Shown here: piece by piece, positions 10,541-64,000 of the stretch | Layout of the letters: each line of letters opens with the position of its first letter | Position numbering within the stretch: position 1 is the stretch's first letter | Assembly: GCF_020745735.1 (NCBI RefSeq) | Contig: NC_083409.1 | Location: forward strand, 15,099,873-15,163,872 | From: Hemiscyllium ocellatum | Lineage: Eukaryota | DNA length: 64,000 nucleotides | Direction of reading: 5' to 3' | Program-made: the position numbers and the translations under genes | Notes under the pieces: generated by a model | Told to the model about the DNA's origin: nothing | The model's database searches: none | What the model saw: the letters and a program-made list of their open reading frames with translations, nothing else

Positions 10541-10564
10541 GTCATCTGCTCATCTCCATTGGAA

Positions 10565-10790
10565 ACTCCAGTGAACAGTAGGCCCATGTTTACTGGTCTC
10601 TCATGGGGGATCCAGTCAGAAGGAGGCCCATGTTTACTGTTCTCCTTTGGAGAGTCCAGTGGGAAGGAGGCCAATGTTTAATGGTTTTCTAGCTTCAGTG
10701 ATAAAGAGGCCTATGTTTCTCCATTGAGCAGCCTTGTGAACTGAATTTCATGTTTACTGGACTCTGTTGGAGTATCCAGTGTGTCATGGA
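10565..10790. repeat. Degenerate ~47-bp tandem repeat
   Basis: Recurrent core aggcccatgtttactg with ccagt spacers, about 4-5 copies. Confidence 0.65.
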
Positions 10791-20204: not shown

Positions 20205-20306
20205 CAGGGCAATATTTATCATTAATCCAACATCATTATTGCTCTTTGATCTCAGTGCTTCTACTTGGATCTTGCTGTAGAAACTGGCTGCCACGTTCCT
20301 GACATT
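20205..20306 (+). mobile_element. DeuSINE remnant split by the LTR element (continues at ~29542-29620)
   Basis: ggcaatatttatc...ggatcttgctgtagaaactggctgccacgttcctgacatt joins gaaacagtg...aaatgtctttggaacaccctga across the insertion, as in the DeuSINE/SacSINE-type tail; family assignment from recall. Confidence 0.6.
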
Positions 20307-21095
20307 TGTTGAGACGGAAACCGAATGGTCTCGTCTCTACGTGTTCGTTGGAAGGAGAGATCAAACCGGCTAGGGTTTGGAGCAAAAACACCGTTTATTA
20401 CAGAATCAAAACTGGCAAACTATACAACGAATTCAAAAGCATGCAAATTCGTTGGAGAAGGCGTTCTGACTCTCCCTTCGGATCTGGTGCAGTTATACTT
20501 CGCGCTTCCTCGAGTTCCCGGTCAGGTTCCCCTTGTTCGGCTCTTTCATTGGTCGGTTCACCTGTCTGTGAAGGGATTAGTGTCTCTATTGGCTGCCCCG
20601 GGATACCTGTCCCACTCCTGCTGTGCCGAACAATGGGTAGACATCCTAGGTTCGGCAGTTTCCGATCTTGTAAATTAAAAGTTTATTGTTGGAAGGGTTT
20701 CCTCATTGCTATGCGCCTGGCTGTCTGGGCGTTCACAATAGTTCTCCATAGTTGAATATACAGATATTATCATTTAACATAGGACCCGAATGAGTTTGAC
20801 GTCAGCGGAGGCATTAGCAAGTACTTTATCAATCAAGTGTAGTATCAGTGCGATTTACACTATCCGATAGTTACCGGTTTCCTTTATTAACAATGAAAGT
20901 GTAACAGGATGATCTGAAACTGACAGACATGTTCTAATCCCCCAGGAATGTGGCCCCAGGCAGACAGTCCTGCAGTGGCTGGGTTTACTTTACATGGCTG
21001 TGTTTTAGCTGGTATCTGACAGTGTCTGCTTTAATAATGGTGCTCCCCTCCCTAGCCCCAATGTAGGTACCCCGATAGCAGATTCTCCCCAACAT
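20307..21095 (-). repeat. 3' LTR (789 bp)
   Basis: Direct repeat of 28754-29541; about 6 substitutions + 1 indel counted by eye; AATAAA (minus) at 20394-20399. Confidence 0.97.
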
Positions 21096-21106
21096 TCCCT
21101 CCCTTG
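21096..21106 (-). other. Polypurine tract
   Basis: Minus strand reads AAGGGAGGGAA immediately before TGTTG of the 3' LTR. Confidence 0.85.
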
Positions 21107-24100
21107 GCCTCGAAAGAGGCCACACCCCCTTATCCCGTAAGGAACGCAACCCCACGAGGCGACCGGTGTCCGGTGTTGTATCGACCAGACTCACCGGTTC
21201 TAAGGAGACAGTCATATGGGGATGAAGGGTGCCCTGAAAAACGCGCCGCTACACAATTAAGCAATAGATGGTCACAGCTGCATGCTAAGTTAAACTAATA
21301 GTTGAAGTAATTGAGGCAGTGTCTGCAGAAATAACGAAAAGCACAGGATTAGACATACATTGCAATAAGTCATTCAGAGCTGGCGAAATGTACGCGAGTG
21401 CGTTAGAATGAGTAAGCCATTTAGTAAACGCAAGTCTGTAGTCCAAAGAGCCGGCAAATGTAAATAGGCGTTGTAAGTTTGGAAAGGGAGTAGGAACAGC
21501 CTGGTACCAGCAGTTTAGGTACCCGCTAGAGATGTGAACCCCAGTGTGAAACTGTACTGTGCCCCGGTGGTCCCGTAGATCAGTATGGTCCAGAGAGCAG
21601 CAGTGCTGTCCAACCGTCCGACACGGATGCAAGCAGGCAGAAATCTCATCAAATGGAGATGAACGGAGGCCACCCGTTCCGATGTCAATGCGCGACTGTG
21701 CCTGTCTTAGGTTGTCCCTCGCCCGAGGGATCTTACCCGTCATTGGCTAACCAGTCGTGCTGCATTGAGTAATCGACGCCGACATCCATTTCACCACCCC
21801 AAGGACAGGCGTGGGCAGCTCAGTAGCATGGTCAGTGGCCTCCGAGGGTGGCTGAGGCCAGTCAGGAATATTAGACAGTCCGCAAGGGCCGCTTGCGAGA
21901 ACAGCAGTGTTTCAATTGCCAAGGCACACAGTACATTTCACCCACCCGCTGTTATGGAAGGATCAATTCACATATCCCCAATTTAAACGGGCAAAATAAA
22001 TAAGTGGGGGCTCTTTGGACAACCAGGCTGCATTTAGCGTACATGAAGATGAAAAGTTAGTCATGAGTACAACAGGATCAGACGAATTCGAAAGAAAGTC
22101 ATTGAGGGAGCTGACACGCACCGGTGAGATAGAATTTACTACGCCCAACCCGCGAGCTCATGGAACGGCGGTAATATACCAGTGGGGAGAAGAATTGGGA
22201 GGTGCCCACTCGCCAGCCCTTATCGCAACCAGCCGTAAGCAAGAAACCCGGTATCATGGCTCACGAGCGGACGTCGCATTACAGCATGATTTGGATGTGT
22301 CCCTGTCCGTTTGTAGGAGGTCACACACAGGCTGCCGTGTTGTCGGAGTTGGTGGCAGCGGCGTCTCCTGGTGGAGCTCAACGGATGGGGGTCCGGTTGA
22401 AAAGTAATGATACCTCATCACCTTTAAATCAGTGAGATGGGGCTGTGGGAATGCAGTAAAAAGGAGTCCCCGCATCACCAGGGTGATATATGGCGGGGTC
22501 AGTCAGGAACCATGTGACTACTATGGGAAATAAAGTGTTGCGTTGTAAGGGGTCTTTGGGGTGGCATGTCTGGGAGACCGGAATGGACGGGAGGCAGTCC
22601 CCAAAGTCTCCAGTCAGTACTCCTGAACATAAGGTCTGTGCTCATGTGGACTGTCAAATGCAACCAGGAAGAGTGTACTCAACCATTTGTGTAAGAGGAA
22701 TGGGGGCAGATATAAAGACCATGGTGAAAATAATGACGGTAGTGTGAAAGCCTTAACTATTCTTATGAGTCGCGGACCTGTATGTGGCAGTATTCCACAA
22801 AAAGGAGTCACATCAAAATAGAGAGAACTCTGTGTGAGGTAGAAGGAGTGGTTTCATGTAAGGGAAAGGGTACAACTTTACACAAAGGTAGTCAGAGGGA
22901 TTCGTGATCTCAAATCAGAGAAAAAGGCTCCCTAGCACGGGCTGCCACAAAAAGGCAGTCGAGGCAGGGGTAGCCAGATTATACTGTAGGTGTTTTAATG
23001 TTCGTCGAATTACAAAGAGGCAGAGGAAAAATGTAAAAAACGTAATCATGACACTGGTCCAGTGTCGGTGAGGTAATTGCGGGGAGCAGTCACGCAAACG
23101 GTGTCAAGTCGCAATATTCTGACAAAGTTACAATCAAGTGTGCGCATAGTGTGGAAGACAATTAGTAGGATAATCCGTGTCCATTTGAGCAGCAGCACTA
23201 CACGGGGTAGATGAAAGTCGGGACACTGATATAAATGCAAGATAGTACGAGTGACAGTTCTGACTCGGTGGGAATGTGTGCTAGCAGCTGCAGGAGCACA
23301 GGCGCCTGTATGTTTTAAAACGCAATGTTTGAAGTGTAAAAACATTCGTCCAGGAGTTGTGTCGAAAAAATAGAGTAAGTCCCTCGAGAGGGAAGTGGGA
23401 TTGGTAATAGTGAGAAGGGAACTACAATAGACTGCATAGGGGAAGGCCTACGGTACGCCTTGATACTGTGCGGTAAGGGGCGCAAGCAATCTCGATTTGC
23501 ACCCCGGGGAACTGCCCGTGCTCGGGGCGCCCAACCAACGGGGTTGTCGTAGGACAATCGTTTGATGAGTCACCCATGGAGACCGTTTAGGATAAGGGTC
23601 ATTAATGTGGAAATGATGAGGATCCCTATCAACTCTGTGGCAACAGGACAATAGAGCAGGTAAATTTCCACCATGTGTTTAGGGAAGACACAGCGCAGGA
23701 GATCCCCCTAACCTCTCAGGGCGTGCAGCGTAAGCCTCAAGGCGGCCGGGACCCCGTCTAGCAGGCAGGGCGGGGATTTTCGCCCCCGGACACTTGGGTA
23801 TGATATTGGAGCGAACGGCGACTGTGAGGCAGACAGTATTGGTAACATCGAGAAAGGCGCCTATACAATGGAGAAAGACCAATGTAGATAAAAAGGGGTT
23901 GAGTCACCAGCTAAAGGGCACAAACTTATCCTGGCGGCTATTTGCCCGCTCGAAGCGGAGTCTATGATAAACCAGGTGGACCTCCCAAGAGAAGGCCCAA
24001 TGAAGAGTTTAGACAGCAGAATAAAGTACAGAAGAGCAAAGATATCAGTGAAACAGAGCCATGTCGGTGTAGAAGGGCAGCAACCCAAACTCTACGTAGA

Positions 24101-24995
24101 AACCGTGCCAAGGTGGGGTTGCATGATCCCCTCTCTTTCTGCACCTCCCCGTCAGGTCCTGTCTCATCGAGTGACTTTAGGGATATATTAGGTTGCGCTG
24201 ACCTGGAGCAATGAGAGAAGTGGTGCATGCGGTGGCCTATGTGTTTCCAGCCAGCTCAGTATAAGATATGATGATGATGATTATGGAGAGGGGGACAATG
24301 TAAAACTCTGGGCAATTAGGAGATTTGTGGTGTGACGAAATTGGACTGTTTGCCTGAGGGGACTTGTCCCCCCAAACGAGATACAAAACGAGAGGTGCAA
24401 GTATAATCCTTGTGTATGCAAGAATCTGTGTGTGTGTAGGGCCGTGTGGCATAGACAAAAGAGAATGCGCAGGTGCTGCGGGCATATCGGACTTCATCCC
24501 TGTGTAAAGGAGAGGGAGAGGGAGAGTATCATAAAAGGATGGTCAGACAGGTCAGGACAGAAATTGTCTGTGTAGCACTTTCCTCCGTTTGACACTTGAG
24601 GATTTGATCAGTTTGAGGGAAGTAACAGCCTTTAAAAGATACCCCGGGAAAAGAATCATAAAGGAACCTGGTGACCCTGCTGTTCTCAGCGCGAACCAGC
24701 GCCTTGCAAAAGATACGAACAGATGAGTTGGAGAGGACTACTCGGAGTTGAAGAGACTGAAGGATTTGGGCAGGAGCTGAGTATTGATCCCTGTGGGAGG
24801 CGATTGTATGTATAATGCCTTCAAGCAAAAGGCGACAGCAAAGTGCTGCCGATACTGTAGGTGCGGTGGAGGATAAAAGAGAGCGTTGGCCAGGAGTGTA
24901 ACAGAGAAAAATGAAAGGCAGGCGTGAGCGCCCACAGTGCAACAGAGAGGTCAGGAACCTTTAAGTTTGCAGTGGCGGTGGCACCATTTATTATT

Positions 24996-25275
24996 TGGAG
25001 ATGACGTGAGGAATCCTGGTAGCAAACCTCAGGGAGCATGAGAGTGGGGAAAATCCTGGTAGCAAACCTCAGGGAGCGTGAGATTGGGGAAAGAAGCCAT
25101 TTAGTCTTTGGAGACGACGTGACGAACCCTGGTAGGAAACCTCAGGGAGCATAAGACTTTGGAAAGAAGATGGGGTGCAGAGCACGGCAGTGGAAGCATA
25201 GTGAGTGAAATGCCCTAATGGAGAGATGAGGCCAGAAGATGAGTTACTGTGTCCTGGTAGAAAACCTCAGGGAGC
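24996..25275. repeat. Four dispersed copies of CCTGGTAGNAAACCTCAGGGAGC
   Basis: Copies at 25015-25037, 25055-25077, 25128-25150 and 25253-25275; two are preceded by tttggaga(t/c)gacgtga. Confidence 0.9.
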
Positions 25276-26402
25276 GTAAAACCTTAAAAAGAGATGGAGC
25301 GTAGGGATCAGCGGATCCTCAATTCAATGAGAACCAGGTGAATTCAATGCAGGCTGAGTGAAGGACAAAGCTGAGATGACCTCAGATCCGGCGGTGACCA
25401 TAAAGTGTGTAGGTTTGGGAGGAGACGATGAAGGGACGTGACCATGGCGTGGGGAATGGAGAGCGGGGTGTAGGATAGGGCAGTACAATCGGCAAGAGGA
25501 GTCTGTACGAGATTTCAATGGGAAGGTTTGGTACTGACTGGCAGTTACAGGTTGCATGTTCAAAGCATTGGAGAGTGTAGCCTCAGACAGGTAGACTGGC
25601 TGGCATCTTCAACCCGTATGGTTGCCAATACCCGCTTCAGGGACTGGAAATGGCCGTGTCTGTGGCAGCAGTAGCTCAACCCTCCCTAGCCGCAAAGTTG
25701 AGGAGGGGGGACAAGTAGCAGGAGGAAATTGCTTTAAAATGAGCGTCCATAATGCTTTAGCGAATGAAAAAATCTGTGGACTTGGGAGAAAAGATAAAAA
25801 TGGGTTCGTGAGAGGGGGCAGAAAAATGTGGAGGGCATAGACGGAAGAAGGAGTAGGTGGGCCCCCCCTCGTTCTTGGCACTTTGTGAACACGAGGGGGA
25901 AAAGGGATGGCCTAAACACCCATGCCGGTGGACAAAAAGATGAGTGAGCGGCCGCGAGGAAGAGAGATGGGCCAAACACCCTGCTGTGTGCTGAGTAGCA
26001 CGTCCTAGTTGGAGGCCTGAGGCCTATGACCAGCGGGGGAAAAAGAGAGAGACAAAATAAGTGGGCTGGGGGATATTCGGGCAGTGGGACGGCCAACCAC
26101 TGGACATACAAAACGTTGTAAATGAAAACGCACAATATGGCGATACGGCAATGCGCATGTTGTTGGTCGGGACATTAGAGTTAGAAAGGTACAACCTGTC
26201 AGAGAAGATGTGGTTAGAGGCATGATTCATATCGACATCCCAGTAACTGAAGAGGACCTGTTCATCGAGCAATCCCCTGGAGTAGGGCAATGACGCTTGA
26301 GAGACCCATCGCGGTAGTGGTGGCGCGGTAGTTGGGCTAATAGGGTGGCGGAACGTCCGCAGGCGAGCAGCCCCTTCTAGACTGTGCAATCCTGCCAAGA
26401 GT

Positions 26403-26560
26403 GAGCATTCGCGCCAAAAGCGAACGGGCACCGCCCCAACTGAGCGTTCGCGCCAAAAGTCAGCTGGCCCCGCCCAACCTGAGTCTTCACGCCAAAAGCA
26501 AGAAAGCCCGCCAAGAACTAAGGTGACCCGCCCAGAGAAGGGTGACCCGCCAAAACTAGG
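26403..26560. promoter_or_regulatory. 39-bp tandem repeat of E2F site + GC box (candidate internal promoter)
   Basis: TTCGCGCCAAAA 26408-26419 and 26447-26458, TTCACGCCAAAA 26486-26497, each followed by a CCGCC(C) motif; further CCCGCC(A/C) copies to ~26555. Confidence 0.6.
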
Positions 26561-27832
26561 GTCAGCACGGGACACCCCGGGAGTTGCCGTCTTAGGATTC
26601 CACAACCGTAGTGTTATTAAAATAAAAACTCCACCATCCCTTCCTGCACCCCCTCTCTACATCCAGGTATTCCTTCCCAAGTATAAGAGTAATTAAAAGT
26701 GATAGTGGGGGAACAAGCGGTATTTAATCATAAAAATCAAGACGAGACTATGGAGAAAAACCCCAGACCATTAAGTGATCAATCCCAAAACGCTAAGTGT
26801 AGGGAACAACACTCACGTACTCCGACAGCAGTAAAACTGCTTTCGGCTGCTGGGCGGCTTCCCACGGTCCCTCTCCGTCACTCAGGCTGTCGGCGCCGGT
26901 CCACTGTACACCGAGACCTGGGATGAAACATTTGCTGCGACACCTCCGTTCGCCGCGTCTGTTAAAATCACTGCACTCACTCACTCACTCCCTCTCTCAC
27001 TGGGCCGGCCCCACACTGGTTTTCATCCACATACATGCCAACCCACGCATACTGTCGGTGTGTTCGTACTCTCGTCTCAGCCTGTCGCAGTCCCCTGTCC
27101 CCAGTTTTAGTGACATGTTTGGCAGGGGCGTCCGAAATGACTGGGGCTGTCGTGGAGGTACAGTGGCCCCCTTGCCACTGCGGGTTGAATGTGACTAACA
27201 GTTTCGTCTTCCACCCCAGGGATTTATCGGCGGTCAGTGGTGCCCAATCAGTAGGGGGTTTTCCTAGGGCTATTGTTTGCCGCACTGAATATTGCGGCGA
27301 GAGTAGGAGACCGTGTACAATTTTGTTCATTAGCGCCGTATTTGTGAGGGTCTCTTTTAGTTTGGTCAATATCAGGTCTTTCTTTGGGCGGGCGCTTGGT
27401 TAAACACTTGATCCAGTGCTGTCTTGTGCACTGTTACACTGTCCAGTAATAAAAGAGCATGCCAAGTTACGTCTGTGCCCACCGTGAGGTGCCACCAGGG
27501 CACTCCGGGGCGTAATGGTCGAAAGTGGGTCATTTTTGGTGGTCCAAAGTTCAAGTCCCCCATGACGGATCTCACCTGGTGGGTACCACTTTAAAACCAG
27601 TGCGTTTTTCAAAAGCCTGACCTTCGCGTGGCAGATTTCTGCTCTTAACAACCGGTCTAAGGCAAACGCCTGTGCAGGTAAACCCTATCCAGGAGATGAG
27701 ATCCGCCCTCTGTCCCCTTAGGATGCTCGCAGCGAGTGTGTCTATCGATAGTTGTCAGAGATAAAGTGCTTACTAAAAAGAAAGGATCCAATCAGTCAAG
27801 TGCAGTCAGCGCTGTATTAATTAATTTCAGAA

Positions 27833-28436
27833 AGCGTCCAGGTTCCGTAAGCCACGCTTTTACCTTAACTCAGAAAGCTGCGTCCAGGATCCGAAATCCA
27901 CGCATAAACTTTACTGAAAAATCCGCGTCCAGGATCCGAAATCCACGCGTAAAACTCAAACTCAAAAACTGCGTCCAGGATCCGAAATCCACGCATTAAC
28001 TTAACTCAAAAACCGCGTCCAGGATCCGAAATCCACGCGAAAACTCAAACTCAAAAACTGCGTCCAGGATCCGAAATCCACGCATTAACTTAACTCAAAA
28101 ACCGCGTCCAGGATCCGAAATCCACGCGTAAAACTCAAACTCAAAAAGCTGCGTCCAGGATCCGAAATCCACGCATTAACTTAACTCAAAAACCGCGTCC
28201 AGGATCCGAAATCCATGCGTAAAACTCAAACTCAAAAAGCTGCGTCCAGGATCCGAAATCCACGCATTAACTTAACTCAAAAACTGCGTCCAGGATCCGA
28301 AATCCACGCGTAAAACTCAAACTCAAAAAGCTGCGTCCAGGATCCGAAATCCACGCATTAACTTAACTCAAAAACCGCGTCCAGGATCCGAAATCCACGC
28401 GTAAAACTCAACTCAAAAAGCTGCGCATTAACTTAA
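27833..28436 (-). repeat. Leader tandem array: 12 full units of 44-47 bp, alternating A/B (about 91-bp dimer)
   Basis: Core GCGTCCAGGATCCGAAATCCACGC followed by ATTAACTTAACTCAAAAA or GTAAAACTCAAACTCAAAAA(G); degenerate units at both ends. Confidence 0.97.
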
Positions 28437-28732
28437 GGCTAGCCATGGATCAATTAGTCACTTCAGTACCGCGAAAACAGGCAGGTATTAGTGAAGAAGT
28501 GAGAAAATAGCTTACCAGTATGGACTCTGCAACGTTGCTGCCAAACTGATTTAAAAGTACTGTTTGTGTTGGTGAGGATCAGGGAGCAGACAAAGACTGA
28601 CTAACTAAAAAGTTTACCTACTGGAAGTCTTTGCTTTAACAGGTGCTTCCTGACCTTTTAAAAGTTCGGCCGAAAGTTTGTCTGCCCTCTGGTCCGCCAA
28701 CGTGGCCAATCTTACGGTCATCTCTTTCCCTT

Positions 28733-28751
28733 CCCACGTTCAGGCTCACCA
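28733..28751 (-). other. Primer-binding-site-like sequence
   Basis: Minus TGGTGAGCCTGAACGTGGG starts 2 nt after the 5' LTR; shares TGG and AACGTGGG with tRNA-Lys1,2 PBS but is not a clean match. Confidence 0.6.
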
Positions 28752-28753
28752 TC

Positions 28754-29541
28754 TGTTGAGACGGAAACCGAATGGTCTCGTCTCTACGTGTTCGTTGGAA
28801 GGAGAGATCAAACCGGCTAGAGTTTGGAGCAAAAACACCGTTTATTACAGAATCAAAACTGGCAAACTATACAACGAATTCAAAAGCATGCAAATTCGTT
28901 GGAGAAGGCGTTCTGACTCTCCCTTCGGATCTGGTGCAGTTATACTTCGCGCTTCCTCGAGTTCCCGGTCAGGTTCCCCTTGTTCGGCTCTTTCATTGGT
29001 CGGTTCACCTGTCTGTGAAGGGATTAGTGTCTCTATTGGCTGCCCCGAGATACCTGTCCCACTCCTGCTGTGCCGAACAATGGGTAGACATCCTAGGTTC
29101 GGCAGTTTCCGATCTTGTAAATTAAAAGTTTATTGTTGGAAGGGTTTCCTCATTGCTATGCGCCTGGCTGTCTGGGTGTTCACAATAGTTCTCCATAGTT
29201 GAATATACAGATATTATCATTTAACATAGGACCCGAATGAGTTTGACGTCAGCGGAGGCATTAGCAAGTACTTTATCAATCAAGTGTAGTATCGGTGCGA
29301 TTTACACTATCCGATAGTTACCGGTTTCCTTTATTAACAATGAAAGTGTAACAGGATGATCTGAAACTGACGGACATGTTCTAATCCCCCAGGAATGTGG
29401 CCCCAGGCAGACAGTCCTGCAGTGGCTGGGTTTACTTTACATGGCTGTGTTTTAGCTGGTATCTGACAGTGTCTGCTTTAATAATGGTGCTCCCCTCCCT
29501 AGCCCCAATGTAGGTACCCAGATAGCAGATTCTCCCCAACA
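28754..29541 (-). repeat. 5' LTR (788 bp) with retroviral-type promoter
   Basis: In minus order: CRE TGACGTCA 29244-29251, CCAAT 29035-29039 and 28995-28999, TATAA 28940-28944, AATAAA 28841-28846. Confidence 0.95.
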
Positions 29542-29619
29542 CATTGAAACAGTGTAGCTTGTCAAACAAAACTGTCTGTAAATGTCTTTGGAACACCCTG
29601 AAATGTTAAGGGCTGGATT

Positions 29620-33899: not shown

Positions 33900-34550
33900 T
33901 GTGTGTATCTCTGAGTGTGAGTGTTTAACTTAATACTGCCTGTCGATGTCTCTCTGAGTGTGGGTGTGTTACGAAGAGAGACACCCACAGACAGCGAGAC
34001 ACCTATCCACAGCATGGAGTGTGAGTGTGTTACACAGTGCTGCCTGTCTCACAGAGTGCATGTGTTACTTAGTGCTGCCTGGAGGTGTTTCTCTCAGTGT
34101 AAGTGTGTTACTCTGTTAAAAATCACACAACACCAGGTTATAGTCCAACAGGTTTAATTGGAAGCACACTAGCTTTGGGAGCGACACTCCTTCATCGGGT
34201 GATAGTGGAGGGCTCGATCGTAACACAGATTTTGTTACGAACTGTGTTACGATCATAATTCTGTATTACAATCGAGCCCTCCACGATCACCTGATGAAGG
34301 AGCAGCACTCTGAAAGCTAGTGTGCTTCCAATTAAACCTGTTGGACTATAACCTGGTGTTGTGCGATTTTTAACTGAGTACACCCCAGTCTAACACCGAC
34401 ATCTCCAAATCCTGTCTCTCAGAGTGCATGTGTTACTGAGTGCTGCCTGTAGGTGTCTCTCTCAGTGTGAGTGTGTTACTCTGTGCTGCCTGGAGGTGTC
34501 TCTCTCAGTGTGAGTGTGTTACTCTGTGCTGCCTGTAGGTGTCTCTCTGA
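33900..34550. repeat. ~41-bp minisatellite (ctctcagtgtgagtgtgttactctgtgctgcctggaggtgt)
   Basis: Several degenerate units, interrupted by the insertion at 34115-34409. Confidence 0.85.
34115..34409. mobile_element. Palindromic Penelope-type pLTR pair with hammerhead core
   Basis: Long inverted repeat gttaaaaatcacacaacaccaggttatagtcc... / ...ggactataacctggtgttgtgcgatttttaac; CTGATGA..GAAA core at 34291-34319. Confidence 0.8.
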
Positions 34551-35604: not shown

Positions 35605-36060
35605 TACTCTGCCTCACAGCGCCAGAGACCCGGGGTTGAATTCCCACCTCAGGTGACTCTCTGTGTCGAGTTTGCACATTTTCCACGTGTCTGCATGGAT
35701 TTCCTCCAGGTGCTCCGGTTTTCTCCCACAATCCAAAAATGTGCAGTTAGATGAATTGGCCTGGCTAAATTGCCCGTAGTGTTAGGTTAATGGGTAAAGG
35801 TAGGAGAATGGGTCTGAGTGGGTGATGGGTCGGCGTGGACTTGTTGGGCTGAAGGGTCCGTTTCCACACTGTAAGTAATCTAATCTAAAATCCTTGATCA
35901 CTGTAGGCAATTTAGCATTGCCAATTCATCTAACCTGCATGTCTTTAGATTGTGGGAGGAAAACAGAATACCCAGAGGAAATCCACACCGACATGGGGAA
36001 GACATTATAACTCCACACAGACAGTTGCCTGAAGCTGGAATCGAACCTGGGTCAAAACAC
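35605..36060. mobile_element. Two V-SINE (HE1-like) copies in opposite orientations
   Basis: V-domain gagtttgcacattttcc..gtctgcatggatttcctccaggtgctccggtt on + and its reverse complement at ~35960-36050. Confidence 0.8.
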
Positions 36061-36069
36061 TTGGATCAG

Positions 36070-38160
36070 CCTTGACTTCAATCCAGCCTCTGCCTCCACT
36101 TTGCAACCAAGACTCAGACTACATTTCCCAGAGTCATCCTGAGTCCAACTGGCTATCTGCAGCCAGCCAGAACACTCACTCTCCTTCCTCACCCATCCAC
36201 CTCCACTTCTCCCTCTTCACCTCATCCCCACCTTCCCACTCCCCCACCTCACTCCACAACCCATCTCTGCCCCAATCTCTTTTCTTTCCCACGCCCTTTC
36301 CTTGTGCTCTACCACAATCAACCCTCACCCACCACATGCCATCAACCTTCCCCCTCCCCTCCTTCAGCCAACTTGGGTCCCTGCGAAAGCCTCACCCCTG
36401 AGCCTTCCCCGACATTTACTATCACACCACCCCCCCCCCCCCCGACCTCGAACTCTCTGAGGCCAAAATGTCTATCCTCAGGAAAGGGCTCACAGTCATT
36501 CCCGCCTGATCCCATCTCAACGAAACCCGCACCCACCAGGACGTGGAGCTCTTCTTCTGCCACCTCTACCTCCGTGTCTTCTTCTTTAACAAAAACTCCC
36601 AACCTCCCTCTGAGGACCTCTCCTCCCACCTCCAACCTTCCTCCTCCACTTGGTCACCCCTCCAGACGTGTACACATCCTAAACCTCTTCACTGCTGACC
36701 AGCCACCTCAATTTCTCCACCATCCCCCACCACCCCCCACCCTCTCCAACCACAGCCCCGCTGAAGGTGCAGTGCTCCACTCTCTCTGCACCAACCCCTA
36801 GTTCACCATCAAACCCGCTGACAAAGGTGGAGCGATGGTAGTCTGGAGAACGGACCTCGATGTGCCAGCGGCCAATCGCCAACTCTCCAACACCACGTCC
36901 TACCTTCTCCTTGCCCATGATCCCATCGTGACCCATCAGGCCAAAATCACTCGCACTGTAAGTGTCCTCATTACCTCCAGTGATCTCCCATCCACTGCAT
37001 CTAATCTCATAGTCCCCCAGCCCTGCAATGCCCAGTTATACCTGCTCCACAAGATCCACAAACCCAACTACCCTGGCTGACCTATCGTCCCAGCGTGGTC
37101 CTGCTCCACCGACCTCCTCTCACCCTACCTGGACTCCACCTTCTCCTCCTTGGTTCAGGCACTTCCCACCTACATCCACTACACCAACCACACCCTCCAT
37201 CTCTTCAGTAACCTTCAGTTTTCTAGCCTCGAGTGCTTCATCTTCGCGATTGATGTACAGACCTTATATATGTCTATACCTAATAAGGATGGCCTCCAGG
37301 CCCTCCACCTCTTCCTCTCCAACAGACCCATTCAGTCCACCTCCACCAATATCCTCCTCTGCCTCGCTGAACTAGTCCTCACTATCAACAACGTTCCCTT
37401 TAAGTCTTCCTTCCTCCAAATCCAGGGAGTGGCCATGGGCACCCGGATGGGCCCCAGCCATGCCTGCCTCTTTAGCAGCTATGTTGAACAGTCCCTCTTT
37501 AGTGCCTACACAGGCACAGTGCCCCAACTCTTCTGCTGTTACATTGATAACTGCATCATGGAGTGTCCTGCTTCCAGGCTGAACTGGAGCAGTTCATTGA
37601 CTTCGCTCACAACTTTCCCCCCACCCTCAAATTGACTTGGTCCATCTCGGACACCTTCCTTCCCTTTCTTGACCTCTCCATTCCCATCTCTGGTGACAGT
37701 GTTCAGACAGACATTTACACAAACCAAAAGACTCCCATTACTACCTGGACTACACCTCTGCCCACCGAGTATCCTGCAAGAAATCCATCTCATTCTCCCA
37801 ATTCCTCTGCTTCTGCCCAATCTGCTCGGATGAGGAGACATTCCAGTGATCACAGGCGTCCACCTATTTCGAACAACATGCTTTTCCTCCCTCTGTCATC
37901 CACTGCACCATCTCCATTTCCCATTCTATTGCTCTCAAACCACCCCCTCCAAACGCAATAAAGACAGAGTCCCCAGTGTCCTCACCTACCACCCCACCAA
38001 TCTCCGTATCCAACGCATCATCCTTAAACACTTCTGCTAACTCCAACTAGACCAGACCACCAAGACCATCTTTCTCTTCCCACCCCTGGCTGCCTTCCAC
38101 AAGGACTATTCCTTTTGACAATTTTTGGTTTGCGTCACTCTCCCACCAACCCTCCCGAAC
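36070..38160 (+). mobile_element. Penelope-like element, degraded RT
   Basis: IKPADKGGAMVVW, LYLLHKIHKP..PG.PIV, DVQTLYMSIP, QGVAMGTRMGPSHA and YIDNC motifs. Confidence 0.9.
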
Positions 38161-49079: not shown

Positions 49080-49720
49080 AAGGACTTGCATTTGTGTAGC
49101 ACCTGTTGCAACCTTAGGATGACTCATGCCCCTCACTTCTGATTGTACATAGCACGATCCCAGCATGCAGTCTGATAATGAGTGGAGAATCAGGTTTTCA
49201 CTGATGTTAATTGGGAGATAAATATTGACCAGGACACCATGGGGATCTGCCCTGCTCTTCTAATATGCAGTGGCATCTTCCACTGCCCTCGAGAGGGCAG
49301 ACATCAGAACATCCCATCTGAAGACGGTCCCTCAGTGCTGAACCTCTTACAATGCTACACTTCCTCAGTATTGACACACCAACAGTGCAACACCCCCTCA
49401 GTATGAACTGTCTGCTAGTACAGCACTCCCTTAGTACTCAACCTCTAATAGTCCTGCACTCCCTCAGTGCTGAGACTCAGATTGTGCTGTACTCCCTCAG
49501 TACTGACCCCTTGATAGTGCTGCACTCCCTCAGTACTGAGCCCCTGACATTGCGGCAGTCTCTCAGTACTTACCCTCTGACAGTGCAGCAGTCTCTCAGC
49601 TCTGACCCTCTGTCAATGTTGCACTCCCTCAGTGCTGACTTTCTGACAGTGCTGCACTCCCTCAGCACTGACCCCCTGACAGTGCTGCACTCCCTCAGCA
49701 CTGCACTGCACTCACAGCCT
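49080..49720 (-). repeat. DeuSINE remnant with internal ~33-bp minisatellite (49340-49710)
   Basis: Unit gtgctgcactccctcagtactgaccccctgaca, about 10 copies (VLHSLSTDPLT repeats in ORF 49352-49726), next to gagagggcagac..catctgaagacgg Deu-like sequence. Confidence 0.75.
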
Positions 49721-59235: not shown

Positions 59236-61099
59236 ACTAGGGTAGGAATAGGGCCAATCAAAGACAGCAGTGGGAAGTTGTGTGTGCACCCTGTGGAGAT
59301 CGGAGAGGTGCTAAATGAATATTCCTCATCTGTTTTCACTCAAGAAAAGGAGAATATTGTCGAAGAGAAGAATGAGATATTAGACTAGAAAGGATTGAGG
59401 TTAGTAAAGAAGAGATGTTATCAATTCTGATAGGAGTAAAAGTAGACAAGTTCCCTGGGCTAGATGGGATAAATTTTTGGATTCCCTGGGAGCCTTTGGC
59501 TTTGATCTTTGAGTTGTCATTGTCTGCAGGTTTAGTACCAGAGGACTGGAGGATTGCAAATGATATGCCCTTGTTCAAGAATGGCAGTAGAAATGACCCA
59601 AGTAATTATAGACCAGATAGCCTTACAACTATTGGAGGAAAAGTTTTGAAAAGGATTATAAGAGATAAGATTTATAATCATCCCGCAAGCAACAATTTGA
59701 TTGCAGATAGTCAACATCGTTTCGTCAAGGGCAGGTCTTGTCTCACAAACCTCGCTGACATTTTTGAGAAGGTGACCAAGCATGTGGATGAGAGTAGGGC
59801 AGTTCACGTAGCGTACATGGACTTCAGTAAAGCCTTTGATAAGGTTCCACGAGGTAGGCTGTTGGAGAAAATGCAAGGCATGGGATTGAGGGTGATTCAG
59901 CAGTTTGGAGTAGTAACTTGCTTTCTGTAAAAAGGTAGCGAGTGGTGGTTGATGGAGAATATTCAGCCTGAAGTTCGGTGACTAGTGGTGTTCCATAAGG
60001 ATCTGTTTTGGGACCTGTTTGTCATTCTTATAAATGACTTGGATGCAGGCAGTGGTCGATTTGTTAGTAATATTGCAGATGACACTGAAGTCAGCGGAGT
60101 AGTGGATAGTGTGGAAGAATGTTGCAGGTTGCAAGGGGACTTGGATAATTGGGCTGAAAGGTGGAAAATGGAATTCAATGCAGATAAATGTGAGGTGATT
60201 CACTTTCGGAAGAATAACAGGAAAGCAGAATACTGGGTCAATGGAAAGATTCTTGGTAGTGTGGATGTGCAGAGGAATCTTGGAGTGCATGTACATAGAT
60301 CCCTGAAAGTTACCACCCAGGTTGATAGTTCTGTTAGGAAGGCACAAGGTGCGTTAGGTTTTATTGGTAGAGGGATTGAGTTCCAGAGCCATGATGTCAT
60401 GCTGCCACTGTACAAAATGCTAGTGTGACCTCACTTGGAATATTGTGTACAGTTCTGATCGCCCCATTACAGGAAGGATGTGGAAGCATTGGAAAAGGTG
60501 TAGAGGAGATTTACCAGAATGTGCCTGGTCTGGAGGGAAGGTCTTAGGAGGAAAGGCTGAGGGACTTGGGTCCATTCTCATTGGAGAGAAGAAAGCTAAG
60601 AAGGATTTAACAGAGACATACAAGATGATCAAGGTAGGGTGGACAATTAGAGTCTTTTTCTAACCATGATAATGTTGGCTTGTACAAGCGGGCGTAGCTG
60701 CAAATTGAGGGGTGATAGATTTAACACAGATGTCTGAGGCAGGTTCTTTACTCATAGAGTGGTAAAGGCGTGGAATGCCCTACCTGCCAATGTAGTTAAC
60801 TCAGCCACATTAGGGGCATTTAAACAGTCCTTTAGTAAGCATATGGATGCTGTTGGTATAGTGTAGGGGGATGAGCTTAGATTAGTTCACTGGTTGGCAT
60901 AACATCATGGGACGAAGGGCCTGTTCTTCGCTGTACTGTTCAGTGTTCTGTGTTCTGCAAGTGTGGCTAATTTTGGTAAAGTACAGTTTTGCACACTTTG
61001 CTCAGTTCAGCTCTTTTGACCAATGTTCAGTATTGCAGGGTCACACTGTCTAGAGTGTTCCTGCATTCTGTTGTGTACTATTGTGTTCTGGGAGTCATG

Positions 61100-64000
61100 C
61101 TAGGGAAAGTATGTGAACACATTGGAGAGAGTCCAGAAGTGATTTACATGAATATTCCAGGGATGAGGTACTTCAATTGGGAAGAAAGATGGAAGATGTT
61201 GAGACTGTTTTCCTTGGAGAGTTGAAGGCTGAGAGGAGATTTGATTGAAGCTTTCAAAATCATGGAGGGTCTGGACAGAGTGACTAGGGAGAAAGTGTTA
61301 CAGTTCCTAAAAGGATAAAGCATGAGCGGGCACAGACTCAAGGTTATTCACAAAGAAACAAAATTAACACAAGAAGAAAATCTTCTCACACAGCAAGCAA
61401 TTAGCATCTGTAATGCACAGCCTGGAGCTGTGGTGGAAACAGGTTCACGTGGAGTACTGGACGGTTGGTTAAACAGAAACAATGTCTGGGGTCATTGGGA
61501 AGAGGCAGGAAATTGGCAGAGTCATAACACTCATTCAGAGAGCTAGTACATGCTCGATGGACCAAAGGACATCTCCTACACCGTCACAACTTCATGATTC
61601 TGTTGTTAATTTCACTTTTAACCCTTTAGTGCTATCCAATGTTATTTCCAATTATGTCACAGAATACAGGGTGGTCAGGACCAAAGTATGAAAATTGACA
61701 ATAGTGACATTGCCAATGAAAAGTAAGAAAGGTGAGCACAGTGACTAAGGAATTACACTGGATCATTATCTACTGAGGAGGAAGATGCCAGCTGGCTGTT
61801 CCATGGATATTAATGTTGGCTCAGTGATGGGCACTCTTCAAAATTAACAACAGCAACGTAGTATATAATGTTACTAAATGATGACAAACCCTCAGGATTA
61901 GGTGGTTTCTATCATCAAATTTTGAAGGAAGCTGGTCAGAACATTTCTGATGCTCTGACTTTATAATCTTCAAAAGTTCTCTCCATTTTTTAGCATTCAT
62001 TTAAATGGGAAAATTGTTCATGTCATTCCACTGTTTAAGAAAAGTGAGAGATTACAACGAAGGAATTATAGACCTGTTAGCACAACATCTGTTGCTAGAG
62101 AATTACTACAGTGGTTAAGTAAGGTTAAGGCGACTGTAAACCTTGAAAATGTTCAGCTAATCAGAGACAGGCAGTACAGATTTGTCAATTATAGGTCATG
62201 CCTGATGGAACTTGCCTGATTCTTTTTGAAGGGATTACTAAAGTAGTGGAGGAGGGAATTGAGCTTAAACATCTCAGTCCAAGGACATCACTGCAGGAGT
62301 TCCTCAGGGTAGTGAGTCAGGATCAACCACCAAGAAACTTTTCTGATTCGGTATGTGGATGTACCAAATAGAGAGGGTGATCTACGCTTGGGAAATAAGG
62401 CAGGACAAGTGACTGAGGTGTCAGTGGGGGAGCACTTTGGGGCCAGCAATCATAATTCCATTAGTGTTAAAATAATGATGGAAAAGGATAGACCAGATCT
62501 AAAAGTTGAAGTTTTAAATTGAAGGAAGGCTAACTTTGACAGTATTAGGCTAGAAAGGTAAAGGACAGTTGGGAAAGGGAAGCCAGAGACAGTGCATTCC
62601 TGTTCGGGTGAAAGGTAAGGCTGAAAGGTGTAGGGAATGTTGGATAACTCAAGAAATTGAGGCTTTGGTTAAGAAAAAGTAGGAAGCTGGTATAGACAGC
62701 AGAGATCGAGAGAATCCTTTCAAAAGTATAAGGCAATAGGAGTATATTTAAGAGGGAAATCAGGAGTGCGAAAAGGGGACATGAGATAGCTCTGTCAAAT
62801 AGGATTGAGAAGAATCCAAAGAGTTTCTTTTATAAATACATTAAGGACAAAAGGATGAGAACTGGGGAGAGAATAGGGCCCCTCAAAGATCAGCAAGGCA
62901 GCCTATGTGTAGAACCACAGGAGATGGGGGAGATAGTAAATGAGTACTTTGCATCAGTGTACTGTGGAGAAGGAAATGGAAGAATGTGGGGAAACAGATG
63001 GTGACATCTTGGAAAATGTTCATATTTCAGAGGAGGAAGTGCTGAAAGTCTCGAAATACATAAATGTGGATAAATCCTAAGGTCCTGATTAGGTGTACCC
63101 TAGAATTCTGTGGGAGGCTAGGCAAGTGATTGCTGGGCCCTTTGCTAAGATATTTGAATGATCGATAGTCACAGGTGAGGTACCAGAAGCCTGGAGGTTG
63201 GCTAATGTGATGCCCCTGTTTAAGAAAAGGGGTAAGGAAAAGCCATGGAACTATAGACTAGAGAGCCCAATGTCGGTGGTGGGCAAGTTATTGGAGGGAA
63301 TCCAGAGGGACAGGATTTACAAGCATTTGGAAAGGCAAGGACTGATTAGGGATAGTCTGTATGGTTTTGTCCATGGAAATCATGCCTCACGAACTTGATT
63401 GGGGTTTTTGAAGAAGTCACAAAGAAAATTGATGAGGACAAAACAGTGCAAGTGATCCAAATGGACTTCAGTAAGGTGTTCGACAAGGTTCCTCATGGGA
63501 GATTGGTTAGCAAGGTTAGATCTCACAGAATACAGGGAGAACTGGATATTTGGATATAGAACTGGCTCAAAGGTAGAAGACAGACACTGGTGGTGGAGGG
63601 TTGTTTTTCAGACTGGAGGCCTGTGACCAGTAGAGTGCCACAAGGATCGGTGCTGGGTCCACTACTTTTCATAATTTATATAAATGATTTGGATGTGAAC
63701 GTAAGAGATATAGTTAATAAGTTTGCAGATGACACCAAAATTGGAAGCATGGTGGACAGCGAAGAAGGTTACAACAGAGTACAATGGGATCTTGATCAGA
63801 TAGCCAATGGGCTGAGGAGTTGCAGATGGAGTTTAATTTAGATAAATGTGTGGTGCTGCATTTTGGAAAAGCAAATCAGAGCAAGACTTGTACACTTAAC
63901 GGTAAGGTCCTACAGAGAGCTGCTGAATAAAGAGGCCTTGGAGTGCAGGTTCATAGTTTCTTGAAAGTAGAGTTGCAGGTAGATAGGATAGTGAAGGAGG
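61100..64000 (+). mobile_element. Further CR1-like fragments; the last runs off the window end
   Basis: LRGDLIEAFK (61230), NYRPVS (62065), [28 protein letters not shown] (63640-63750). Confidence 0.85.

What the first reader, a model, noticed from the sequence alone, without database searches (positions are those of the whole stretch)
20307..29541. Recently inserted 9.2-kb retrovirus-type element with intact cis-signals but no gag/pol/env and unexplained cargo
Seen: TG...CA LTRs ~99% identical, CATT TSD, PPT, PBS-like site and a classical CRE-CCAAT-CCAAT-TATA-polyA LTR. The ~7.6-kb interior has no ORF over 193 aa, and I found no RT (YXDD), protease (DTG), CCHC or integrase DDE motif. Established: near-identical LTRs imply recent integration, and a pol-less element must be mobilised in trans. 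Inference: this is a non-autonomous satellite of a shark retrovirus. Its interior is not simply eroded gag-pol, because it carries organised repeats, a promoter-like array and splice sites. It may be an undescribed ERV-derived family.
Basis: partly seen in the sequence, partly recalled or inferred. Interest (0 to 1): 0.85.

Follow-up and report, generated by a model that had tools for sequence, protein, structure and literature searches.

The report
Young non-coding LTR retroelement, minus strand
This is a real, fairly young 9.2-kb insertion with all the end signals of a retrovirus-like element but no recognisable gene, so other elements must have copied it; mouse, zebrafish and plants have elements of this kind, so it is a new example, not a new category.

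Summary
Two 788-bp LTRs (20307-21094 and 28754-29541) differ at 6 sites with no indel. They begin TG and end CA, and a CATT duplication flanks them. The element reads on the minus strand: an 11-nt purine tract abuts the LTR at 21094, and a TGG-initiated primer-site candidate starts 2 nt inside the LTR at 28754. CCAAT, TATAA and AATAAA lie in promoter-to-polyA order only on that strand.

The 7,659-bp interior shows no coding signal. None of 86 stop-free pieces hit Pfam, while two old RT fragments elsewhere in the window did. ORF lengths match shuffles, there is no 3-base periodicity, and three large protein searches found no homologues. With this little LTR divergence the interior was already non-coding when it inserted, so it was copied in trans.

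The interior is not host DNA. Its CpG o/e is 0.72 against 0.22 outside, and dispersed window repeats cover 0.3% of it against 39% outside.

Untested: copy number, a helper, retrovirus versus other LTR superfamily, the tRNA primer and the host species. "Recent" means about 2-17 My, depending on the rate assumed.

Verdict: a new member of a known kind (like ETn, VL30 or LARD). Interest is modest.

The parts
20303..20306 (.). Target-site duplication CATT, copy at the element's 3' side (element sense = minus strand)
   Evidence: Read directly. It matches 29542-29545.
20307..21094 (-). 3' LTR (788 bp), TG...CA ends
   Evidence: 782/788 identical to the other LTR, no indel.
21095..21105 (-). Polypurine tract (11 purines on the minus strand) abutting the 3' LTR
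   Evidence: The corresponding place for a plus-strand element (upstream of 28754) is pyrimidine-rich.
21106..26401 (-). Non-coding interior zone, pyrimidine-rich on the element's sense strand (56-64% purine on +), CpG o/e 0.4-0.9
   Evidence: Pfam negatives.
24984..25292 (.). Loose array of 40-bp units (4-5 copies, 83-95% alike)
   Evidence: (D3, D4).
26402..26562 (.).
   Evidence: sequence. Function not tested.
26563..27833 (-). Interior zone with balanced composition, GC 0.51-0.58; holds the most protein-like open stretches, none with a homologue
27834..28425 (.). Tandem array: 44-bp unit in two alternating forms (91-bp super-unit, 6.5 copies, 95% match); CpG o/e 1.1-1.8
   Evidence: (D1). 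Fold not unusual (z -1.65).
28426..28733 (-). Leader between the primer site and the array; contains two GT donor-like sites (motif level only)
   Evidence: Fold z +0.56, no unusual structure.
28734..28751 (-). Primer-binding-site candidate: 18 nt starting TGG, 2 nt after the LTR end
   Evidence: The tRNA partner was not identified.
28754..29541 (-). 5' LTR (788 bp). On the minus strand: CCAAT at 29039-29035 and 28999-28995, TATAA at 28944-28940, AATAAA at 28846-28841. Inferred U3 about 625 nt, R about 90 nt, U5 about 70 nt
   Evidence: On the plus strand there is no AATAAA and no TATAA.
29542..29545 (.). Target-site duplication CATT, copy at the element's 5' side

Best explanation
A non-autonomous LTR retroelement, 9,235 bp long and oriented on the minus strand. 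Its LTRs, primer site, purine tract and integrase-type ends are all in place, but its 7.7-kb interior encodes nothing recognisable. Shown: the LTR pair, the TG...CA ends, the 4-bp duplication, the purine tract at the 3' LTR, a TGG-initiated site 2 nt after the 5' LTR, promoter and polyA motifs in the right order, absence of coding signal, and a composition foreign to the host. Inferred: RNA starts in the 5' LTR (near 28915) and ends after the AATAAA of the 3' LTR. A coding-competent relative (an endogenous or exogenous retrovirus, or another LTR retrotransposon) packages that RNA. Reverse transcription is primed from a host tRNA at 28751-28734 and from the purine tract, and the helper's integrase inserts the copy, duplicating CATT. 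The interior was already non-coding at insertion, because the LTR divergence allows only about 0.4% change per copy since then. The tandem arrays may act as binding or packaging modules, but nothing tested here shows that.
For: LTR identity and ends. Orientation. No protein-domain hit in 86 stop-free pieces (best E 0.012, all far below the curated cut-offs). Positive control in the same window: RVT_1 at E 4e-13 and 3e-8. ORF spectrum equals shuffles (a 210-aa maximum is reached in 12% of shuffles). No period-3 signal (maximum z 2.4 over 24 windows). No homologues for three ORFs among 5.8 billion clusters, and only a chance-level repeat hit among 1.84 billion representatives. Nothing in PDB. 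CpG o/e 0.72 against 0.22. Dispersed-repeat cover 0.3% against 39%. Four of the 6 LTR differences are at CpG, which fits methylated germline residence after insertion. Precedents: ETn/MusD and VL30 (PMC6466679); non-autonomous class in zebrafish (PMC8672886).
Against: Only one copy is visible and no helper is in the window. The family, the partner and the packaging are therefore all inferred. The primer site could not be matched to any tRNA. Pieces shorter than 40 aa were not scanned, and pieces of 40-54 aa were scanned only on the minus strand (20 of 24). A very heavily fragmented gene remnant could escape, although the ORF and periodicity statistics argue against one. At 7.7 kb, the interior is large for a non-coding passenger. 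Its origin and its strand-asymmetric composition are unexplained.
Confidence: 0.7

Rival explanations
1. A one-off defective provirus: a single dead-on-arrival copy made when a replicating virus co-packaged or recombined with non-coding RNA. It would not be a member of a propagating satellite family.
For: Only one copy in 64 kb. No relatives in any searchable collection.
Against: None of the searchable collections holds the host genome, so absence of relatives says little. The cis signals are all intact and the internal arrays are homogeneous.
Confidence: 0.15
2. An ordinary endogenous retrovirus whose gag-pol-env has eroded in place.
For: The interior length (7.7 kb) is that of a simple retrovirus.
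Against: The LTRs differ by 0.76% with no indel, so decay in place is slight. No domain hit in 86 pieces, although older RT debris in the same window is detected. ORF lengths and periodicity are at chance level. CpG is not decayed.
Confidence: 0.03
3. Two independent solo LTRs of one family that happen to bracket host DNA.
For: None beyond the bare possibility.
Against: The outer 4-bp duplications match. The purine tract and primer site sit exactly at the inner LTR edges. Interior CpG o/e is three times that of the host. The interior carries none of the dispersed repeats that cover 39% of the rest of the window.
Confidence: 0.01
4. The interior encodes novel proteins, as a complex retrovirus with unrecognisable genes.
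For: A few open stretches of 130-210 aa on the sense strand.
Against: Composition alone predicts those lengths. There is no periodicity and no homologue anywhere.
Confidence: 0.03

Closest known systems
Mouse ETn elements (helper: MusD, class II ERV)
   Same: LTR-bounded, several kb long, no coding capacity, an interior largely unrelated to retroviral genes, young insertions, dependent on a coding relative (PMC6466679).
   Different: No helper or shared-LTR partner has been identified here. The host, the LTR and the interior sequences are unrelated. This element is larger (9.2 kb), has a 4-bp duplication and three internal tandem arrays.
Mouse/rat VL30 (co-packaged with MLV, class I)
   Same: A non-coding LTR element with retroviral cis signals, moved by another virus's proteins (PMC6466679).
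   Different: VL30 is about 5 kb. Packaging by an infectious virus is demonstrated for VL30 and only conjectured here.
LARD (large retrotransposon derivatives) class of TE classification
   Same: Meets the operational definition: LTR-bounded, over 4 kb, non-coding interior. The class has been annotated in vertebrate genomes as well (PMC8498967, listed).
   Different: LARD is a descriptive bin defined in plants with Gypsy-type helpers. It says nothing about this element's ancestry.
Non-autonomous ERV class reported in zebrafish (DrERVs)
   Same: [quoted passage not shown]
   Different: No sequence comparison was possible, and any relationship is unknown.
Elephant-shark CmiERVs
   Same: LTR-bounded proviruses of 9-10 kb in a cartilaginous fish (PMC4422223).
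   Different: Those carry pol and env and have LTR divergence of 2.4-3.3%. This element has no genes and 0.76% divergence.

Membership tests
LTR retroelement (provirus-type insertion) | Two direct long terminal repeats, near-identical | tested here: met
   788 bp, 782 identical, no indel.
LTR retroelement (provirus-type insertion) | LTRs begin TG and end CA; short target-site duplication | tested here: met
   TG/CA ends; CATT on both sides (a 1 in 256 chance match).
LTR retroelement (provirus-type insertion) | Polypurine tract abutting the 3' LTR | tested here: met
   11 purines at 21105-21095 on the minus strand. Absent for the plus orientation.
LTR retroelement (provirus-type insertion) | Primer-binding site complementary to the 3' end of a host tRNA | tested here: inconclusive
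   A TGG-initiated 18-mer lies 2 nt after the LTR. No tRNA was found to match it. The host tRNA set was not available.
Retroviridae / endogenous retrovirus | gag, pro, pol (RT, RNase H, integrase) and env homologues | tested here: not met
   86 stop-free pieces against Pfam gave no retroviral family. The control RT fragments were detected.
Retroviridae / endogenous retrovirus | RT phylogeny places it within retroviruses | not testable with these tools
   There is no RT in the element, and ancestry could only come from a partner that shares the LTR.
Non-autonomous LTR elements (ETn / VL30 / LARD type) | Cis signals kept, coding capacity absent, and already absent at insertion | tested here: met
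   and the Pfam scans. LTR divergence of 0.76% limits decay since insertion.
Non-autonomous LTR elements (ETn / VL30 / LARD type) | Multiple dispersed copies forming a family | not testable with these tools
   One copy in the window. No collection available here holds the host genome.
Non-autonomous LTR elements (ETn / VL30 / LARD type) | A coding-competent partner sharing the LTR, primer site or leader | not testable with these tools
   None in the window. The RT fragments at 59-64 kb share no DNA with the element.
TRIM (terminal-repeat retrotransposon in miniature) | Whole element under about 1.5 kb | tested here: not met
   The element is 9,235 bp.

The most novel reading that the evidence does not exclude
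The element belongs to a still-propagating family of large non-coding 'satellite' genomes carried by a retrovirus of a cartilaginous fish. Its CpG-rich, repeat-free interior would have evolved outside the methylated germline, and its tandem arrays would be functional RNA or DNA modules rather than debris. That would make it a VL30-like system in an early-branching vertebrate lineage.
Probability: 0.15. Interest if true: 0.55.

Novelty: new member of a known kind. Interest (0 to 1): 0.3.

Why it matters
If a genome census confirms it, this would be a clean, young example of a non-coding LTR passenger in a lineage where published ERV surveys start from pol homology (PMC4422223) and so cannot see such elements. 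Its LTR could serve as a sequence tag for finding a still-intact helper, and its insertion as a presence/absence marker. The mismatch between the element's CpG content and the host's is a useful dating and origin clue. It does not open a new category: the principle is established in mouse, zebrafish and plants.

Tried and rejected
- Plus-strand orientation: rejected. It has no purine tract before 28754, no AATAAA or TATAA on that strand, and its TGG lies 10 nt from the LTR.
- Protein homology: Pfam on 86 pieces, three word-indexed searches of 5.8 billion clusters, one exhaustive HMMER search and two PDB searches. The only hit, P0001, is a TSP1-repeat protein. It matched through 9 repeats at E 5.6e-4, and the query itself has no TSP1 signal, so I judged it chance.
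- Rfam at gathering level on the whole window and at E up to 5 on the element: nothing meaningful.
- RNA folds of the leader and the array: not more stable than shuffles.
- tRNA identity of the primer site: ARAGORN on the window found none. A 15-mer scan of metagenome contigs gave 120 chance hits, none in a tRNA. The 18-mer in viral contigs hit two phage coding regions. A full-text search found PCR primers only.
- Array unit in viral contigs: no match.
- Nested insertions: no further LTR pair and no meaningful inverted repeat inside.
- Whether the flanks are halves of one repeat: the immediate junction lies in no repeat seen elsewhere in the window.
- Host identification from a dispersed-repeat string in the literature: no match.
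None was entered in a tool, a note or this report, and no conclusion rests on them.
Full report
**Observation.** The repeat search and a gapped alignment show two direct repeats of 788 bp, at 20307-21094 and 28754-29541, with 6 mismatches and no indel. Each begins TG and ends CA. CATT lies immediately outside both, at 20303-20306 and 29542-29545. Five of the six differences are transitions and four sit at CpG. The element is 9,235 bp and the interior 7,659 bp. No other copy of the LTR or interior occurs in the 64-kb window.

**Orientation.** On the minus strand an 11-nt purine run (21105-21095) abuts the LTR. On that strand the other LTR is followed, after 2 nt, by an 18-mer starting TGG (28751-28734). 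Within the minus-strand LTR the order is CCAAT (twice), TATAA, then AATAAA about 100 nt later and about 90 nt before the LTR end. On the plus strand the LTR has no AATAAA and no TATAA, and the sequence before 28754 is pyrimidine-rich. The element therefore reads right to left in window coordinates. The split into U3, R and U5 is inferred from motifs only.

**Interior: no coding signal.**
- I cut the interior at every stop codon and scanned each piece separately against Pfam. This covered all 66 pieces of 55 aa or more on both strands, and 20 of the 24 minus-strand pieces of 40-54 aa.
- The best E-values were 0.012 and 0.016, to unrelated families at about half or less of their curated cut-offs. 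No retroviral family appeared.
- The same procedure on other parts of the window found reverse-transcriptase fragments at 59376-59927 (E 4e-13) and 63560-63838 (E 3e-8), so it works on decayed debris.
- The ORF-length spectrum is what first-order Markov shuffles give: the 210-aa maximum is reached in 12% of shuffles.
- No 600-nt window shows 3-base periodicity (maximum z 2.4 of 24 windows).
- Three ORFs, including the longest and one in the LTR, have no homologue among 5.8 billion protein clusters.
- The most protein-like piece gave one borderline, repeat-inflated hit among 1.84 billion representatives, which I regard as chance. It gave nothing in PDB.
- Rfam found nothing.
- Because no gene is recognisable, there are no gene breaks to count.

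**Non-coding at the time of insertion.** The LTRs have diverged by 0.76% without indels, so each copy has changed by roughly 0.4% since integration. An interior that was coding at insertion would still show reading frames of hundreds of codons, and it does not. The element therefore inserted as a non-coding unit and needed proteins from elsewhere. This step is an inference, but a tight one.

**Not host DNA.** CpG observed/expected is 0.72 in the element, LTRs and interior alike, and 0.22 in the rest of the window. Dispersed intra-window repeats cover 39% of the sequence outside the element and 0.3% of the interior. Together with the matching duplication and the inner-edge signals, this excludes two solo LTRs bracketing host sequence. 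It also argues against a recent capture of host sequence.

**Anatomy on the minus strand.** The order is as follows:
- 5' LTR;
- primer-site candidate;
- a leader of about 310 nt with two GT donor-like sites;
- a 592-bp array of 44-bp units (91-bp super-unit, 95% match, CpG o/e above 1);
- a pyrimidine tract plus AG near 27773;
- a 1.3-kb zone of balanced composition;
- short GC-rich arrays at 26562-26402;
- a 5.3-kb zone that is pyrimidine-rich on the sense strand, with a loose 40-bp array at 25292-24984;
- the purine tract and the 3' LTR.

Folding of the leader and of the array is unremarkable. The splice and promoter readings of the internal motifs remain untested.

**Age.** K2P distance is 0.0077. 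With t = d/2u this gives 1.7 My at 2.2e-9 per site per year, and 17 My at the 2.2e-10 assumed for elephant shark in PMC4422223. Using only the two non-CpG differences gives 0.6-6 My. This is far younger than the 54-75 My elephant-shark proviruses in that paper, but 'recent' depends on the rate.

**Comparison with known elements.** Elements with LTRs, a primer site and packaging signals but no genes are well known. Examples are mouse ETn (moved by MusD) and VL30 (co-packaged with MLV) (PMC6466679), the LARD class of the TE classification, and a non-autonomous ERV class reported in zebrafish (PMC8672886). This element fits the operational definition. Whether it descends from a retrovirus or from another LTR superfamily cannot be decided without a partner's RT. 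A 4-bp duplication and TG...CA ends fit both.

**Limits.**
- No tool here reaches the host genome, Dfam or Repbase, so copy number, partner and prior description are open.
- The host species was not verified.
- The tRNA primer is unidentified.
- Pieces shorter than 40 aa were not scanned.

**Verdict.** It is a new member of a known kind, of modest interest.

Noticed in passing
window 20283-20306 versus 28730-28753: The host flank just outside the LTR at 20307 resembles the primer-site region just inside the other LTR. They share an 8-mer (20291-20298 / 28734-28741) plus scattered matches. The local score is reached by only 0.7% of random 24-mers from the window; on the other side of the element the figure is 40%. 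This could be chance, or a trace of target choice or of an aberrant end.
   Followed up: partly
window 59376-59927 and 63560-63838 (+): Two reverse-transcriptase (RVT_1) fragments lie in a purine-rich stretch whose surroundings are CpG-poor. They are old retroelement debris with no DNA similarity to the LTR element, and served as the positive control.
   Followed up: partly
window 36000-38000 (+): A strongly C-over-G skewed stretch (GC skew -0.50, GC 0.535). It holds a 241-aa stop-free run at 36076-36798 that has no Pfam hit. It looks like decayed repeat or retroelement sequence.
   Followed up: partly
window 49328-49703; 34415-34548; 10553-10685: Other tandem arrays in the host sequence, with units of 33/66/99 bp, 43 bp and 44 bp. 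None is related to the element's arrays.
   Followed up: no
window 21200-26400: The interior is 56-64% purine on the plus strand over 5 kb, so it is pyrimidine-rich on the strand the LTRs mark as sense. No explanation was found.
   Followed up: partly
whole window outside 20307-29541: The host background has CpG o/e 0.22, and 39% of it is covered by dispersed repeats shared within the window, which is typical of a methylated, repeat-rich vertebrate genome. The species was not identified.
   Followed up: partly
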